Shown: positions 13,596 through 60,150 of the stretch, piece after piece
Numbering within the stretch: position 1 is the first letter of the stretch
Layout: each line of letters opens with the position of its first letter
Source of the DNA: Podarcis bocagei
Lineage: Eukaryota
Assembly (NCBI GenBank): GCA_964188305.1
Contig: OZ076895.1
Length of the DNA: 64,000 nucleotides
Reading direction: 5' to 3' (one strand)
The notes under the pieces: model-generated
Told to the model about the DNA's origin: nothing
What the model saw: the letters and a program-made list of their open reading frames with translations, nothing else
Database searches by the model: none
Position numbers and translations under genes: made by a program

Positions 13596-13712
13596 TATGA
13601 CTTTCCTCCTGCTATCATGCCTGTGGTGGACTCTGTAGATCCTGCATCATGGAGGCAGGGCTTACGTAAAACTGGCATTATTCTTGTTCCCAGTAAAGGT
13701 GAAAAGTCTCTG
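13596..13712 (+). CDS. PPP1R12A: Putative in-frame alternative cassette exon '9b' of MYPT1 (117 nt, 39 aa): YDFPPAIMPVVDSVDPASWRQGLRKTGIILVPSKGEKSL
   Basis: ctttag| acceptor, CTG|gtgagg donor, phase 0/0 like its neighbours, no stop; PASWRxGLRKTG shared with exon 10; TGCATG at 13788-13793. Confidence 0.82.
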
Positions 13713-15227
13713 GTGAGGGCTCTGTGTGTGGTTTCCCCCTCCAGGTTGCAAAATAACAAGTGTTAATTCAAATATTGGCACTGTAGCTGCATGATTTTAA
13801 ATGGTGTGTCTCTTTTGCATCTCATTGTTAATTTGTAGTTTATAGTGTAATGTTTACAAAGCTAACCTTTGAAAAGTTGATTTACCAAGTGTTTGGAATT
13901 TATTAACTTGCCCAGGAAATTGTGTGAGGTCTTGCTTCCTTTTCCACATACATACAATATACATCTATAGGGAATTTCATTTTGAAATATACCATGAAGC
14001 ATGGAATTCTGGAATTAAAAATACTGAGGTTGAGAATGTGTCTTTCTTCTGTGACCTCTGTATAGTCCCACTTTCTGCTGTGAGCAAACATAGGCCACCA
14101 TGTAGAAATTCTTAGGCTTTGACAGAAGTCACTTGCTTGTACCTATTACCTTGGCAGCCATGTTTGCCCTCATCTACATGATCCGAGGTTGGGTGAATGT
14201 CTTTAACTGCCACAAAATATTGCAGCTAGCAAGCTTTGCATTGTGTTACCTTGGATGACATGGCAGGTTCTGTATCTTTCTCCCAGTCCCCCCCCCCTCC
14301 CCTGCTATCTTATTTAACAGTTTAAATTAAATGACTTTTGGTGATAGGGCAGGTTTTAAGAAGTGTATACCTTGTAGTAAAGATAATTCCTTCCCTTGCC
14401 TCTATTTTGAGGAAGGCCACAACTTGGGCATTAGCAGATTTAATGAAGGATTCATGAAGGAGGCTTACTGGAACTTAGGTTTTGGGTCAGAGCACATTTC
14501 TGCAAGGAATATTAGTCACTGCTGAACAGAACACAGTGGTAAGCAGCAGGGTTCAGGGTGGATTTCTGTAGCAGCTGTGCAAAATCAAAGTTCATGTTGC
14601 TCTAAACCATGTTTCACAATGGACAACCACTGTGTTAGAGTACAAAGCTAAGTAAAAAGAGAGCTGTTCAGATGAATGGCTAGCATTCTTCCCCAATACC
14701 TAAACACACCAAAAGTGACTTTGCATCTGGGGCAGTGTTGGAATTCAATAAGAAGGGAGTGAAGCAATGCCAAGGCCCATTACTGCTTTCCCTGAGTCTA
14801 GAGTCCATGGTGGATGAATCTGTACTAGACAATGTTGCTTACTTGCTTGTCAAATGTGGGACTTCACAAAGATCACGAAGGAGATAACAGGGTTGCTTGT
14901 CTGTAATCCCTGTTCTCCAAGTGTGCTCTGTGCAGTTTCACATCCTACCCTCCTTCTCTAGCATAGAAACTCAACTTGTCTTAAAAATTACTTGTGGTTT
15001 GCTACCAGTGGTGATCTCATGTGAACTGCGGAGAAATACATTAGCCCCATGGTTCATGCTCACAAGGGCAAATATGTCAGCGAGAAGGGCACAGACATAC
15101 TCCATTCCTGTCAAAGTTGTGGAATTACTCATTTTGTGGCCTGTGTATGTACACTTCCAAATGTTTGACTGCACAGAGGACACTTGGAAGAACAAGACTT
15201 ACAGAAAAGCAACCCTGTGTTTTACAG

Positions 15228-15440
15228 TTCCCAACTTCAACTAAGGTTTCTCCCAAAGAAGAAGAGAGAAAAGATGAGTCTCCTGCTTCATGGAGACTAG
15301 GTCTTCGAAAGACTGGCAGTTATGGGGCACTGGCAGAGATTACAGCTAGCAAAGAAACACAGAAAGAAAAGGATTCGACAGGAGTTATGCGATCAGCTTC
15401 AAGCCCTAGATTGTCCTCTTCATTAGACAACAAAGACAAG
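15228..15440 (+). CDS. PPP1R12A: MYPT1 exon 10 (213 nt): FPTSTKVSPKEEERKDESPASWRLGLRKTGSYGALAEITASKETQKEKDSTGVMRSASSPRLSSSLDNKDK; includes the human S445- and S472/S473-equivalent phosphosites
   Basis: tttacag| acceptor, AAG|gtaaca donor; ORF 15117..15470. Confidence 0.96.
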
Positions 15441-16320
15441 GTAACATTTTTTCCAGAACACACGACATAATTAAATTATGGATGGTGATGGTTTTTTTAT
15501 TTTTTAAAAAAAGAAAGACCAGTGTCTGAAGATGATGAATTCCTTACCAAATTCTGACTTCCACATATCATGGAATAAAGTTTCTACTCCTAAAAGCTGT
15601 GAAGACAAATCATGAACTTATATGCCTAGTTCCTGGTGAAGTCTTAAGAGGCACTAGTAGTTGGTATGTGGTGTACCATGAAAGATTTCCGTTCATCAAA
15701 GACAGGGGTTCAGTGATCTTTGTATGTCTTTCTGCATTTTTCATCTAGTTCCTTGGGCAAAGTTTCTGGGGGGAAAGGATGTGCTTTCAAGAATGGTGTG
15801 GCATTTTTTCCATCCTTCAAATAGGAGATGCTTCCTAATGTGTGGTTACTCTGTGTACAAGGTTTAACTACTCTCTTTCTTTTTTTGTAGTAGATCACTT
15901 TCAGTGTAGTTCAGTGATGGGAAGGCCAGACTTTCCACACAACTTGTGTAGGAAGCATAATTCTGTACAATTATCTGTCATGTGTGTTAGGCTCTGTGTA
16001 ATTTAGTTCAGGTTTGACAACTAATTATTTGTTTTCTCAAATGCCAAAGTTTCTATTTGACATTGTTTACAGTAAAATATGTAAAGCGTAAGTGGCAGCC
16101 TCCCTTTAGAAGATTTATTGCTAGATGCTTATTTTTACGCATGAACTAGAAACAGTGTGCCTGTTTTAACACTTTTTCGCTATATGGCCCATAAATTGAT
16201 GGGAGCGTGTGTTTGTGTAATTAAAATTGGGGTCATGTTGGCTACACATGCAGTTGACCTTTCAAAAATCGCAATCGTAAGTCAAACTTGTAAACTTTGT
16301 AAAAAAAATTTCTCTTGCAG

Positions 16321-16538
16321 GATAAAGATACAAAAGGAACTAGGCTTGCATATGTTGCTCCTACAATTCCAAGACGGCTGGCCAGTACATCTGACATTGA
16401 AGAGAAAGAAAACAGGGATACGTCAGCCAGTTTAATACGTGGTAGTGGTTCTTACACAAGAAGAAAATGGGAAGAAGATGCAAAGAAAAATATCTCAAAT
16501 GAAGGATCTTCACCACTAAACACAACCTATCAAAGAAG
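16321..16538 (+). CDS. PPP1R12A: MYPT1 exon 11+12 as one 218-nt exon: DKDTKGTRLAYVAPTIPRRLASTSDIEEKENR/DTSASLIRGSGSYTRRKWEEDAKKNISNEGSSPLNTTYQR
   Basis: ttgcag| acceptor, AG|gtaaat donor; continuous reading frame (ORF 16315..16542). Confidence 0.93.
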
Positions 16539-17358
16539 GTAAATAGTGTATGTTTTGTAGATGTTAAAAGTATAAAGAATTCCAGGTATTTTTATAGAAC
16601 TACATGGTGGTACATAATGAATTTTATACTGTCTGCATTTTCAAATAATAATATAAAGGACAGCAATATTTGTGTTCTTAAAAGGTTTTATACATTAGCT
16701 ATTTATTTACCTGAAAATGGCGAGAGCTGTTTTATTATTATACCTTAATTGGATAAACACTACAAAGCCATCAGCTGAAAGAGGAAATCAGTGTTTGAGG
16801 AAATATGGTTCTGGTGCTTTCCAATCCCAAATGGATGAGGACTGCTAGTCACAGCTTCCTCAGTTATTTGCTTCCAGAAAAGCTGCACTTTCAGTTCTTA
16901 GAACAGCTTCCTTGTTGCCTCTTAATACCAAACTGTTCATGAAGCAACTGTGGCAGCATCCTTGCCCTTCAGTGATGGTCATGCTCGGTGTGAGTAAGTG
17001 ATGTCTAAGACTCAGTTTGGCTCATATATTTTAGTTGATGATACTTTTAATCAGCAATTAGATTTTCTGTATGTAAGTGATGGGCTGTAATAGCAACAAC
17101 ACAGTGCTATTAAGTGTACCTATAAGACTGCAAGCAGATATATTGGTATGATGTTAAAATTGGGTATACAATCTTTGTAGTCTTTTTATGGAAATGAGAG
17201 GGAAATTAGAGTTCTTGTAATTATGCTTAACTTTTTTTACAAATATCTGGAGCTATTTAGTAGATGGAAATCGAGGGCCCATCAAAGAAGAATGGATGGT
17301 GATTTATAACTTAATAAATACACAGTGCTTATTTTTGTAAATTCAAATGACTTTTCAG

Positions 17359-17526
17359 TGGTTCCTTTGGTAGAAGACAAGATGACTTGATTAGTTCTAG
17401 TATTCCAAGTATTACGTCAGTATCAACAGTTACCTCCCCCGCTGGTCTTCAGAAAAGCCTGCTTTCCAGCACAAGCACTGCTACAAAGGTTACAACGGGT
17501 TCAGCAACAGCAGGCATACAAAGCAG
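17359..17526 (+). CDS. PPP1R12A: MYPT1 exon 13 (168 nt), Ser/Thr-rich central region: GSFGRRQDDLISSSIPSITSVSTVTSPAGLQKSLLSSTSTATKVTTGSATAGIQS
   Basis: ttttcag| acceptor, AG|gtggga donor; ORF 17387..17596. Confidence 0.94.
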
Positions 17527-17932: not shown

Positions 17933-18106
17933 TACCTCAAATCGTTTATGGGCTGAGGATAGTACTGAGAGAGACAAAGACAATGTTCCTACGGCAGTGA
18001 CCGTTCCTGTTGCACCATCAGTTGTAAATACTGCGACTACCACAGCCTTGACTACAACTACTTCTGGCACTGTGTCCTCAACTTCAGAGGTCAGGGAGAG
18101 ACGCAG
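17933..18106 (+). CDS. PPP1R12A: MYPT1 exon 14 (174 nt): TSNRLWAEDSTERDKDNVPTAVTVPVAPSVVNTATTTALTTTTSGTVSSTSEVRERR
   Basis: gctatag| acceptor, AG|gtgtgt donor; hand translation. Confidence 0.94.
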
Positions 18107-20900: not shown

Positions 20901-22082
20901 TACATAGTGGCAGTTATTACATGGTCCCAAAGTAGTTCAATTTATTCATTCAGAGTTCAGTGTTTGATTATGTGAGTTTGTTGGCTGCTTAGAATAACCT
21001 AGGATGACAAAATTGCCTACTGCTAAGAATATGTTGAGGAGTGTTTGTTTGCTCTTCCTATTTCCCCACTTTCTTTAAATGGTCATACTTTAAATGGTCA
21101 TAGCTGAGGCAAAGGTTATGAGGCATAAACATAATAGCCAACTGTAAAGCTTAATGCATTTATGTATGTATGTTAGTGCAGTATACTTAACACTTATGAC
21201 ACTTGGGTGTCTGGTATCTTTAAGATATCTCATCTAAAGCAGGGCAGAAAATAAATGAAAGGAAGTGGCACAGCAAAATGTTCAGAAATGTGCATACCAT
21301 AAGCTTTCTGGATGAGCTGAATACTTTGTTAATGTCTATCAAGATGTGTTCTCCTTATGTTAGACATTAATTTGAAGGTGGTATTTGGGGTAATTCGAGA
21401 AATGTTTACTTTATAAATAATGAGGTCTCTTTTTACTATTTAGCTTAGTGCCCTGACAGGCTTTCCCCCATTAAATTTAAAGTCAGGAAAGGGTAGTCTG
21501 TTCCAGCAGGTTGGATTCAACAAGTCCTGACCTACAATCACAATTGGGTTCTGGTTTGTTAAGTAAGTACATGTAGAATGAACCAGTTTCCTGAGTTTGA
21601 ACATAGTTATGGTTTATTCAAAAACCCGAAGGGATTATCCAGTTGTTTCTTACGGTTAAAGGAGAGATGAGGAGCAAGCTTGTTGCAACACATTCTTGTA
21701 ATTGGGAATCATGATATCCCATTGCATCTAAACTAGACCATTGCTGTAGAATCCTTGCTTGATTGAGTGTTGAGAGATCTAATAGTATGAAATGATGTTT
21801 TTAAAACCAGTTTTGTAAAGCAGCAACACTTCAAGTTGGTTGTAAATAAAAACATTTGCTAGTATAGTTCATCAGCAACTAGTTCACTTGGAGTACCATT
21901 TGGAGGGAATAATAAAGACTCCCACACCTACATCCCATAGCCAGTTACCATGAACTCATTAAAAGCACTGTTGCATCTGTATTAGAAAGTGGCAGGTAAT
22001 ACCTCTCAGAAGGCTCAGTTTGATCCTGGGTATTTCTGTTGCTGATCCTTAGGTTAAAGTGCTGACTTGATATTGTAATGTA

Positions 22083-22960
22083 CCGTATTTTTCGCCCCAT
22101 AAGACGCACTTTTTCCCCTCCAAAAATGAAGGGGAAATCGGGGTGCGTCTTATGGGGCGAATGCCTGCAAGCCTCGCGCGCCCGGCAGGAGGTCCGACCG
22201 GGTGCGCGAGGCTTGGGGCGGCAGCCTGTCGCCCGAAGCACGGGGAGCCCTCTGGAGGGCTCCCCCTGCTTCGGGCGAGTGTCTGCAAGCCTCGCGCACC
22301 CGGCAGGAGGTCCCACCGGGTGCGCGAGGCTTGGGGCGGCAGCGGACTGCTTGCGCGCACCGAGAAGCTTGGGGCGGGCTGAGCTCAGCTGGCCCCAAGC
22401 TTCTCGGTGCGCGCAAGCAGTCCGCTGCCGCCCCAAGCCTCCCGCACCCGGCAGGAGGTCCCGCTGGGTGCGCGAGGCTTGGGGCGGCAGCGGACTGCTT
22501 GCGCGCACCTAGAAGCTTGGGGCCGGCTGAGCTCAGCTGGCCCCAAGCTTCTAGGTGCGCGCAAGCAGTCCGCTGCCGCCCCAAGCCTCGCGCACCCGGC
22601 GGGACCTCCTGCCGGGTGCGGGAGGCTTGGGGCGGCAGCGGACTGCTTGCCGGCATGCAGAAGCTTGGGGCGTGCTGAGCTCAGCACGCCCCAAGCTTCT
22701 AGGTGCGCGCAAGCAGTCCGCTGCCGCCCCAAGCCTTGCGCACCCAGCGGGACCTCCTGCCGGGTGCGGGAGGCTTGGGGCGGCAGCGGACTGCTTGCCG
22801 GCACGCAGAAGCTTGGGGCGCGCTGACCTCAGCTTGCCCCAAGCTTCTGGATTAGCGCAGCGCACCTGGGGGGGAAATAAATTTTTTTCCCTTTATTTCC
22901 CCCCCCTAAAATCTAGGTGCGTCTTATGGGCCGGTGCGTCTTATGGGGCGAAAAATACGG
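22083..22960. mobile_element. Young 878-bp non-autonomous pogo/Tc2-like element with perfect 27-bp TIRs, TA duplication and an internal GC-rich palindromic array
   Basis: ta|ccgtatttttcgccccataagacgcac ... gtgcgtcttatggggcgaaaaatacgg|ta; extra subterminal gtgcgtcttatggg copies. Confidence 0.92.
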
Positions 22961-23197
22961 TAATTGTATTATCAGAATATGAAGAGCTTGTATGTGCTCA
23001 GTGCAGAATTACACCAAAACGCAAGCAGTGATCTTGTTGCCACAAAAGAACCTTGTTATTGTTTGAAACCTTCAGTTTCCTGATTTAGTTGTGACTTAAC
23101 CAAGAGGCTTCGGTTGCTCCTTTTTCTATCAAATTATTTTCAAAAAATGCAATTACTTTATACATTGATTACTAGCTAGCAAATCTTTTAACTCCAG

Positions 23198-58249: not shown

Positions 58250-60150
58250 AGGGAGGCAACGCCGGCGCGGCGAGCAGGAGCAGGAGTCGCGATCAGGTTA
58301 CAGCGGGGAACTCGGATGAGCTCCTTCACACAGGCACCAAGGGCGAGGGAGGATCCTCCACGCCCCTTCACCCATTGTCAGGGCCACCTCGGCAGTTTCC
58401 GCTTGCGCTTCGGCTCCTTTCGGCCGGCCACCCTCCGCCCTGTGGGAGAAAGACGGGGAGCTTCGGCAGCGCCGCCGCCGAGCCTTCCGGGACTCGCTCG
58501 AGAGTTCAGTGCACCAACCGCACCACTCACCTGGGAGAAGCGGCGATCTCCGGCTCCGCCGCCGGCTCCTTCCTGGAAAGAAGCATCAACCACCTGATTG
58601 AACTCCTCGCGGGTCAGTATAGAAACTCTGCTCGGAGTTGAAGCCAAAGCAGGCGGACGAGCCGTGCAGACTTGAGCGGTGGGGTCCGGGGAGAAAAGAG
58701 ATAAGGAGAACTTGCTGCTCATTAAAAGGCAAGAGACTTGCGCGCGCCGGGGAGGTGGGGGAAGGAAACTAGATATATATTTTGCCTGGGTTTTTTTGTA
58801 CTTTTGCAATCGGGATGGGAAAGCAGTAGATCTGCTAACTCCGGCAACTCTGCACCCAGTAAACAGGGGGTGAGAGAGTGATATCTGAAAATATCGGCAA
58901 ACTTATGGGGCAAGCGGGTGTGTGTGTGTGTTAACCATAGGAATCCCTGGATGCATCTGTCCAGGAAGCTGGATGGAACGTTAGAAGCTGATAAGATTCC
59001 CGAGTGGCGGATAAACGGGGGGGGGGGGAGGGAGGGAGAGAATAGCAGAAAGTACAGTAAACTCCAGGCGGGGTGGCGGTGGCGGCTGGGTGTTTAACGG
59101 GAGGGGCCCTCGCTAAAAAGGGTCTGCAGAGTGCAGCTGAGGATGCCGCCTCACTCGCTCCCGCTTTTGTCTCCCGCAGCTGCGAGTGTGTGTGTTTGGG
59201 CGCGCGCGGTGTGTCCTGCTCACCCCCCGCCGGCGCCTCCTCTCGTCAGCCGCCAGCCCACCGGCTTCTGGAAGCTTGTCCGCGCCCGGGAGCGAAGTTA
59301 AAAGGGGCGCGAAGTTTCCCGCAACTTTCTCTCACCCCCCCCCCACCCCGCGCTGGGAATATGGCCACCGGGGGCTACCGGGCCAGCGGCGTCACCACCA
59401 CCACAGACTTCCTGGAAGAGTGGAAAGCCAAGCGGGAGAAGATGCGGGCGAAGCAGGCGCCGACAACAACGGCCGCGGCCTCAGGGGACTGCAAAGCTCC
59501 CGGGGCCGCCGCCGCCGCCAACACTACTACTACTACTACAACTACTGCTACTGCTAACGCCGCCACCACCGCCGAAGTCAACAACAACGGCAGCGGCGCC
59601 GGCACGAACTGCGTCCCTGTGGGCAGGAGCGCGCCCAAGGAGCCCCCGCCGAGCACCCCGGCGGCCGGAGCCCGAGCAGGAGTGGCGGAGCCGCCGCCGC
59701 CGGGGCCCAAAGGCGTCGTGGCGCCGGGCTCCCCTGAGGAGGAGAAAGTGGCGGCCAAGGGCAAGGGCTCGTCCGGCCCCAGCGCCCGGAAAGGGAAAGG
59801 GCAGATCGAGAAGAGGAAGCTGAGGGAGAAGAGGCGCTCGACAGGTGTGGTGAACATCCCCACCGCTGAGGTGAGAGGGCGCCGGGGGGGGGGGGGGAGA
59901 CGGGACCGCGCGCGTGACTGGCTCTTTTGAAACGCAGCCCAACGGACAGCCCAACGGCTCCCGGTGCTGCTGCTGCACCTGATGAAGAGCCCGGCGGCTT
60001 CCTGGGCGACGGTGGCTCCTCCTCCCCGCTCCCTCCGAGGAGCTCGCCAGGGTTGGTTCGACAAGTCAGAAGGGAGGAGGCTGTTTACCTACAGGCTGCT
60101 GCTGCTGCTCCCGGGGGGGGGGGATGGGACTACTTCAGGTTGCAAAACCC
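58250..60150 (+). promoter_or_regulatory. PAWR: CpG island covering the PAWR promoter, presumed non-coding exon 1 and first coding exon
   Basis: Abrupt rise in GC and CpG density against the AT-rich background; exon 1 boundaries not determinable by eye. Confidence 0.8.
59361..59870 (+). CDS. PAWR: PAWR / Par-4 first coding exon (170 aa): MATGGYR...DFLEEWKAKREKMRAKQ...SARKGKGQIEKRKLREKRRSTGVVNIPTAE; likely splice acceptor at 59179/59180; remaining exons lie beyond the window
   Basis: aatATGG start; diagnostic Par-4 N-terminus and NLS/SAC-domain start; GAG|gtgaga donor; PAWR is the known downstream neighbour of PPP1R12A. Confidence 0.96.

What the first reader, a model, noticed from the sequence alone, without database searches (positions are those of the whole stretch)
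16321..16538. Apparent precise intron loss fusing MYPT1 exon 11 to the 123-nt 'central insert' exon 12
The frame runs uninterrupted through EKENR|DTSAS (AAC AG|G GAT at 16415/16416). Splitting there gives 95 nt + exactly 123 nt. 123 nt (41 aa) is the size of the developmentally regulated central cassette exon of chicken MYPT1 (M130 vs M133), and the standard numbering (E13/E14 central, E24 31 nt) only works here if this block counts as two exons. No GT remains at the junction, so this lineage could not skip the segment as birds do. Clean intron loss is rare in amniotes, and here it would abolish a regulated splice switch.
Basis: partly seen in the sequence, partly recalled or inferred. Interest (0 to 1): 0.72.

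Follow-up and report, generated by a model that had tools for sequence, protein, structure and literature searches.

The report
Lizard MYPT1 lost one intron cleanly
In this lizard's myosin-phosphatase gene (PPP1R12A/MYPT1), the intron that separates exons 11 and 12 in fish, chicken and human has been removed exactly, so the 123-base piece that chickens can splice out is now welded into a larger exon; it is a real but ordinary kind of evolutionary event.

Summary
Window 16321-16538 (+) is one 218-nt exon with an AG acceptor, a GT donor and an open frame. It splits into 95 + 123 nt at AAC AG|G GAT (16415/16416).

Its outer borders match human PPP1R12A E11 (5' end) and E12 (3' end). Human has intron 11 (about 1.1 kb) at this codon position, as shown in the supplement of PMC9367544. 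Two teleost loci fetched here have an intron of 442 and 165 nt at the same site and phase. The literature describes chicken E12 as the 123-bp skippable central insert.

The missing intron is therefore a derived, precise loss. It is not an assembly artefact. Four genomic contigs from other sequencing runs carry the same 218-nt exon, and their introns cannot be aligned to the window's. They belong to a second, distant lineage of unknown name.

The functional claim is only inferred. E12 skipping is documented in chicken alone, and E12 is constitutive in human. No reads could be laid. E13 (168 nt) and E14 (174 nt) are still separate exons. No conserved internal donor exists, and 218 is not a multiple of 3, so constitutive inclusion is predicted.

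The scan has already noted other clean intron losses in this genome (TERF2, STAT5). I could not place this loss on the tree. Verdict: a new example of a known kind, of modest interest.

The parts
15441..16320 (+). Retained intron 10, between E10 (which ends at 15440, ...GACAAG|gtaaca) and the fused exon. It ends in a polypyrimidine tract plus cag.
   Evidence: The published human E10-E11 junction (PMC9367544 supplement) maps to the same borders.
16321..16415 (+). E11-equivalent part, 95 nt. It encodes DKDTKGTRLAYVAPTIPRRLASTSDIEEKEN and the first two bases of the Arg codon.
   Evidence: Human E11 has the same 5' border and ends at AACAG. Teleost E11 ends at AACAG|gtga.
16415..16416 (+). Scar-free site of the lost intron 11 (phase 2, inside the AGG Arg codon). 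There is no GT/GC here.
   Evidence: compared with L002/L003 and the human figure.
16416..16538 (+). E12-equivalent part, 123 nt. This is the counterpart of the chicken 41-aa central insert and is now without its own acceptor.
   Evidence: PMC4819215 reports a 123-bp central exon and CI residues 512-552. PMC9367544 equates the chicken CI with E12.
16539..17358 (+). Retained intron 12 (donor AAG|gtaaat, rough PWM score 9.0; acceptor ttttcag).
17359..17526 (+). E13, 168 nt (GSFGRRQDDLISSS...). It is still a separate exon whose length is a multiple of 3.
   Evidence: The size equals human E13 (56 aa), and the published junction sequence matches.
17933..18106 (+). E14, 174 nt. It is still a separate exon whose length is a multiple of 3.
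   Evidence: Human E14 has 59 codons. The E13-out junction starts with the same bases.

Best explanation
The window carries the lizard PPP1R12A (MYPT1) gene on the + strand. Intron 11 sits in phase 2 inside the Arg codon after EKEN in teleosts, human and (by the literature) chicken. In an ancestor of this species it was deleted exactly. E11 (95 nt) and E12 (123 nt) thereby became one 218-nt exon, while introns 10 and 12 stayed.

Shown: the exon, its borders, the ancestral intron, and the same fusion in a second distant lineage.

Inferred: the fused exon must be constitutive. Skipping all 218 nt would shift the frame, the E12 part has no acceptor of its own, and no conserved internal donor exists. 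On this reasoning every MYPT1 molecule in this animal carries the E12-encoded 41 residues (the 'M133-like' state), and any central-region isoform diversity must come from E13/E14, as in mammals.

The deletion mechanism is unknown. It could be recombination or double-strand-break repair templated by a spliced transcript or cDNA. It could equally be a genomic deletion between the short CAG|G repeats that splice sites create at both intron ends. I rate these two about equally likely.
For: Exon anatomy.

Gene identity: the best named hit is 'protein phosphatase 1 regulatory subunit 12A-like' from Salvelinus. The neighbouring exons E10, E13 and E14 match the published human junctions.

Ancestral intron: L002 and L003 both read AAC AG|gt...ag|G GAC, with introns of 442 and 165 nt. 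Human E11 ends AACAG|gtaggt and E12 begins after ...aacag about 1.1 kb downstream (supplementary figure of PMC9367544). The chicken CI is E12, a 123-bp exon.

Not an artefact: L001, L004, L005 and L006 come from four Logan runs and are 88.5-97.5% alike. All have a 218-nt exon with the same AG/GT borders, ordinary intron flanks, and introns unalignable to the window.

No usable internal donor: the best internal GT scores 1.6 or less, against 9.0 for the real donor. The only in-frame internal GT (after 16421) is absent from the L001 group.

In human, E12 is not skipped: the junction tables list no E11-E13 joint.
Against: For the window's own species, independent support for the junction is only a k-mer share of the 3.4-kb stretch in 14 runs from several studies. 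That measure does not resolve one junction.

The chicken intron was not seen as DNA here. It rests on papers that call E12 a cassette exon.

The organisms behind L001 and L004-L006 are unknown, so one shared loss cannot be told from two independent losses.

P0007 is an E11-like ORF with the reptile-like DKDTK start that is followed by a GTATGT donor. It shows an unidentified animal or paralogue that keeps the intron.
Confidence: 0.85

Rival explanations
1. Assembly or contamination artefact. An intron was collapsed, or cDNA-derived sequence was patched into the assembly, and the real gene still has intron 11.
For: No reads could be laid on the junction. The best-holding runs may be the very samples from which the window was assembled.
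Against: A collapse would not leave a scar-free, in-frame joint at the exact ancestral splice position. Introns 10 and 12 are intact on both sides. Four independent short-read contigs from another lineage show the identical structure with intron flanks.
Confidence: 0.02
2. The intron was never there in this lineage. The fused exon is ancestral, and other vertebrates gained an intron at this site.
For: None, beyond the formal possibility.
Against: The intron sits at the same nucleotide and phase in two teleosts and in human, and E12 is a separate exon in chicken. Parallel gains at one nucleotide in fish, mammals and birds are far less likely than one or two losses.
Confidence: 0.02
3. The intron is lost, but the 123-nt (or about 117-nt) segment is still removed in some tissues. 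This would use a weak internal donor, for example TAC|GTCAGC after 16421, which keeps the frame when joined to E13. The isoform switch would then survive in another form.
For: A GT at 16422-16423 lies in the same phase as the true donor (101 nt vs 218 nt, both 2 mod 3).
Against: Its score is about 1 on a rough PWM, against 9 for the true donor. The site is absent in all four contigs of the other lineage with the fused exon. The PWM was typed from general knowledge and is only indicative.
Confidence: 0.06
4. There were two independent losses of the same intron, one in the window's lineage and one in the L001 lineage, rather than one shared ancestral loss.
For: The introns of the two groups are unalignable, so they are far apart. 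P0007 hints at a reptile-like sequence that keeps the intron. The scan notes other lineage-restricted intron losses in this genome.
Against: One event is the simpler reading. The two groups share E12 length (123 nt) and sequence signatures such as IRGSGSYTRRKWE.DAKKNISNEG, which fits a common squamate origin. The organisms are unknown, so this stays open.
Confidence: 0.2

Closest known systems
Chicken MYPT1 exon 12, the 123-bp 'central insert' cassette (M133 vs M130; residues 512-552)
   Same: It has the same gene position, directly after the EKEN-R codon. It has the same length (123 nt, 41 codons) and ends at the same border before the GSFGRRQDD exon.
   Different: In chicken it is a free-standing exon that can be skipped. 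Here it has no upstream intron or acceptor and is part of a 218-nt exon that cannot be skipped in frame.
Human PPP1R12A exons 11 and 12 (PMC9367544)
   Same: The outer borders match, and the intron-11 position is the same (AAC AG | next base). The neighbours E13 (168 nt) and E14 are also the same.
   Different: Human keeps an intron of about 1.1 kb. Human E12 is shorter and constitutive, and human isoforms vary E13/E14, not E12.
Documented precise intron losses in animals (e.g. microhomology-mediated intron loss, PMC3698931; RNA-templated break repair, PMC12065846; vertebrate intron turnover, PMC12357937)
   Same: A single intron is removed exactly, with neighbouring introns untouched. Short repeats (CAG|G) lie at both ends of the ancestral intron in the outgroups.
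   Different: The mechanism cannot be assigned here. The CAG|G repeat is simply the splice consensus, so it is not diagnostic.
Other fused exons noted in this same genome by the scan (TERF2, STAT5; notes s1-359591, s1-352314)
   Same: These are also clean intron removal in a lizard gene. For TERF2 an earlier agent placed the loss in the ancestor of wall lizards and worm lizards (not checked by me).
   Different: They concern different genes, and none was tested here.

Membership tests
Precise spliceosomal intron loss | Orthologues in outgroups have an intron at the same nucleotide and phase | tested here: met
   Teleost loci L002 and L003 both read AAC AG|gt...ag|G GAC. Human is shown in the published genomic figure and junction sequences. 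Chicken rests on the literature only.
Precise spliceosomal intron loss | Coding sequence is continuous across the site, with no inserted or deleted codons | tested here: met
   EKENR|D(T/S)SAS is continuous in the window and in L001/L004-L006, and it matches EKENR|DSAAS across the teleost intron.
Precise spliceosomal intron loss | Neighbouring introns and genomic context are kept, so it is not a retrocopy | tested here: met
   Introns 10 (15441-16320) and 12 (16539-17358) have canonical sites. Further MYPT1 exons lie along the window.
Precise spliceosomal intron loss | Seen in independent genomic data | tested here: met
   Four Logan contigs from four runs in another lineage carry it. For the window's own species there is only a k-mer share, which does not resolve the junction.
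Precise spliceosomal intron loss | Transcripts use the fused exon as one unit | not testable with these tools
MYPT1 central-insert cassette exon (chicken E12 type) | A 123-nt segment directly after the EKEN-R codon, ending before GSFGRRQDD | tested here: met
   16416-16538 is 123 nt. E13 starts at 17359.
MYPT1 central-insert cassette exon (chicken E12 type) | Own acceptor and upstream intron, so that it can be skipped | tested here: not met
   There is no intron, no AG/polypyrimidine tract and no GT at 16415/16416.
MYPT1 central-insert cassette exon (chicken E12 type) | Regulated inclusion/exclusion in smooth muscle | not testable with these tools
   No RNA reads could be laid.
Reverse-transcript (cDNA/RNA-templated) intron loss | Adjacent introns lost together and/or a bias towards the 3' end of the gene | tested here: not met
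   Only intron 11 is missing, both neighbours are kept and the site is mid-gene. This does not exclude a short conversion tract.
Microhomology-mediated genomic deletion of an intron | Direct repeat at the two exon-intron junctions of the ancestral intron | tested here: inconclusive
   CAG|G stands at both ends in L002 and L003. That is the ordinary splice-site consensus, and the ancestral squamate intron is not available.

The most novel reading that the evidence does not exclude
The loss is one old event shared by a large part of Squamata. It hard-wired the E12-encoded 41 residues into every MYPT1 molecule and removed a sauropsid-wide developmental E12 switch that birds still use. It would then be both a clean phylogenetic marker and a natural 'CI-always-on' experiment for myosin-phosphatase regulation.
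Probability: 0.2. Interest if true: 0.45.

Novelty: new member of a known kind. Interest (0 to 1): 0.3.

Why it matters
Intron loss is uncommon in vertebrates (PMC12357937), so each exact case can serve as a rare genomic change for dating lineages. This one also hits an exon that is alternatively spliced in chicken smooth muscle and reported to affect PKG-mediated phosphorylation rate in vitro (PMC9367544). If lizards cannot make the E12-minus form, there are two readings: either that form is dispensable outside birds, or its role is taken over by E13/E14 variants.

Together with the TERF2 and STAT5 notes from this genome, it adds to a small set of clean intron losses in lacertid lizards that could be examined for a common mechanism. 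It does not reveal a new kind of biology.

Tried and rejected
- **Read laying.** There is no read-level DNA or RNA evidence. Later local scripts used the whole window file only as a BLAST subject and printed nothing from those places.
- **Word searches.** The search with the E12 part alone found only P0001. The search with E13 found nothing. No bird, turtle, crocodilian or named squamate fragment was obtained.
- **Papers.** The two Dippold & Fisher papers on MYPT exon phylogeny are not held, and Dirksen 2000 has no PMC id.
- **Big representative search: not run.** The operators flagged its cost. The protein's identity is not open. Its 50%-identity representatives, with my word searches already spent, were unlikely to yield named sauropsid loci.
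- **Spliced protein model: not built.** I searched exon by exon, by reference only.
- **Human material.** I used only what is printed in a published paper. P0002 looks like a mammalian transcript fragment, and I did not look up its contig.
- **The search for related loci on metagenomes: not run.** Host contamination there is mostly human.
- **Rejected readings.** Retrocopy (flanking introns are present); intron gain elsewhere (same site in fish and human).

Full report
**What is there.** Reading the window shows a polypyrimidine tract and AG at 16319-16320. A 218-nt open stretch follows at 16321-16538, then a strong donor (AAG|gtaaat) at 16539. The translation reads DKDTKGTRLAYVAPTIPRRLASTSDIEEKENR, then DTSASLIRGSGSYTRRKWEEDAKKNISNEGSSPLNTTYQR. 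No GT stands at the joint. The description is accurate.

**Which gene and which exons.** The only named hit of the word search is a Salvelinus protein named 'protein phosphatase 1 regulatory subunit 12A-like'. Other MYPT1-like exons lie along the + strand of the window. The supplement of PMC9367544 prints the human exon-exon junctions and the genomic sequence around E10-E13. By those sequences:
- The window exon starts where human E11 starts. The preceding exon ends ...AAG at 15440.
- The window exon ends where human E12 ends.
- The next window exon, 17359-17526, is 168 nt and begins with the same bases as human E13 (56 codons).
- The exon after that, 17933-18106 (174 nt), begins like human E14.

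**Is the intron ancestral?** Three lines of evidence agree.
- In the human figure, E11 ends AACAG|gtaggt and E12 begins after ...aacag about 1.1 kb further on. That is inside the same Arg codon, in the same phase.
- I fetched two teleost loci: L002 (Salvelinus, an NCBI assembly) and L003 (a Logan contig). Both read AAC AG|gtga...cag|G GAC, with introns of 442 and 165 nt.
- For chicken I have only the literature. The central insert is a 123-bp exon encoding 41 residues (512-552) (PMC4819215; PMC13755552). PMC9367544 equates it with E12 and speaks of a delta-E12 chicken variant.

An intron at one nucleotide in ray-finned fish, a mammal and a bird is ancestral. Its absence here is a loss, and the loss is exact, because the residues on both sides line up without a gap.

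**Is it real?** The same word search returned P0001, an ORF on a 1.1-kb Logan contig (L001). That contig contains a 218-nt exon with the same acceptor and donor positions and ordinary intron sequence on both sides. Its 90% cluster led to three more contigs from three other runs (L004-L006). The four are 88.5-97.5% identical to each other including introns, and all have the 218-nt exon. Against the window, the exon is 89% identical but the introns do not align at all.

A second, distant lineage therefore has the same fusion. That rules out an assembly collapse or cDNA patch peculiar to this assembly. The tools give only run accessions, so I cannot name these animals. Shared sequence signatures and the 123-nt E12 length suggest another squamate, but that is an inference.

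For the window's own species the only independent support is weak. Fourteen runs from several studies and six closely related organisms hold half or more of the sampled words of the 3.4-kb stretch. That measure does not resolve a single junction.

**What it does now.** This part is inferred.
- A 218-nt exon cannot be skipped without shifting the frame.
- The E12 part has no acceptor of its own.
- A rough donor matrix gives 9.0 for the true donor and at most 1.6 for any internal GT.
- The only internal GT in the right phase (after 16421) scores about 1 and is missing in the other lineage.

I therefore predict constitutive inclusion: all MYPT1 in this animal has the E12-encoded residues. E13 and E14 remain separate exons whose lengths are multiples of three, so mammal-type central variants remain possible.

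That is known only for chicken. The human junction tables list E12-E13, E12-E13b, E12-E14 and E12-E15 joints, but none from E11 to E13.

**How the intron went.** Two known routes fit.
- Repair or recombination templated by a spliced transcript (PMC12065846 and the classical cDNA model).
- Genomic deletion between short repeats at the two junctions (PMC3698931).

Only one mid-gene intron is gone and both neighbours remain. This is not the typical signature of long cDNA conversion, but it does not exclude a short tract. Both teleost introns are bounded by CAG|G on each side, but that is simply the splice consensus. I leave the two routes at about equal odds.

**Context and open ends.**
- The scan's notes record other clean intron losses in this genome (TERF2, STAT5). 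I did not check them.
- P0007 is an E11-like ORF from run SRR089296. It has the DKDTK start seen in the window but odd changes in the otherwise invariant motif, and it is followed by a GTATGT donor. It may be a paralogue, a pseudogene or a reptile that keeps the intron.
- I did not run the large representative search, for the cost reason the operators gave and because it was unlikely to yield named sauropsid loci.
- I did not build a joined spliced model.
- Human sequence was used only as printed in a paper.

**Verdict.** The intron-loss reading is supported. The functional reading is plausible but unproven. The lineage is wider than stated. This is a new example of a known kind of event, of modest interest.

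Noticed in passing
window 13596-13766 (+): The ORF with ...ASWRQGLRKTG...PSKGEKS... noted by the scan as a 'hidden 117-nt cassette exon' (s1-359642) looks like the counterpart of the human 'E9+' exon described in PMC9367544. There the RT-PCR products differ by 117 bp (578 vs 461), and the printed E9+-E10 junction translates to PSKGEKS. If so, it is a known, conserved rare exon rather than a new one.
   Followed up: partly
window 17359-17526 and 17933-18106 (+): E13 (168 nt) and E14 (174 nt) are intact, separate exons whose lengths are multiples of three. These are the exons that mammals splice alternatively.
   Followed up: partly
P0007 (Logan run SRR089296; no DNA served): An E11-like ORF, DKDTK-TRLVYVAPTIPSRRLHSTSDIEEKENR, is followed by a GTATGT donor. 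It comes from an unidentified organism or paralogue that keeps the intron and has unusual changes in the otherwise invariant RLAYVAPTIPRRLAS motif.
   Followed up: no
window 59073-59930 (+): A long GC-rich ORF contains MATGGYR...TTDFLEEWKAKREKMRAKQ. From memory this resembles the first coding exon of PAWR (Par-4), the neighbour of PPP1R12A in human. It was not tested with any tool.
   Followed up: no
window 21945-23031 (both strands): Long ORFs on both strands have near-repeating translations (SRTRQEVPPGARGLGRQRTACAH...). This is a GC-rich tandem/palindromic repeat inside an intron, already noted by the scan as a MITE-like array (s1-359709).
   Followed up: no
L002 2874-3037 (Salvelinus): In this salmonid copy the annotated E12 runs on well past the position where L003 and the tetrapods end E12 (...NRTTPSYPAPTTDKTARPDSEVDR). 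It is either a shifted donor in this paralogue or an annotation read-through on a short contig.
   Followed up: no
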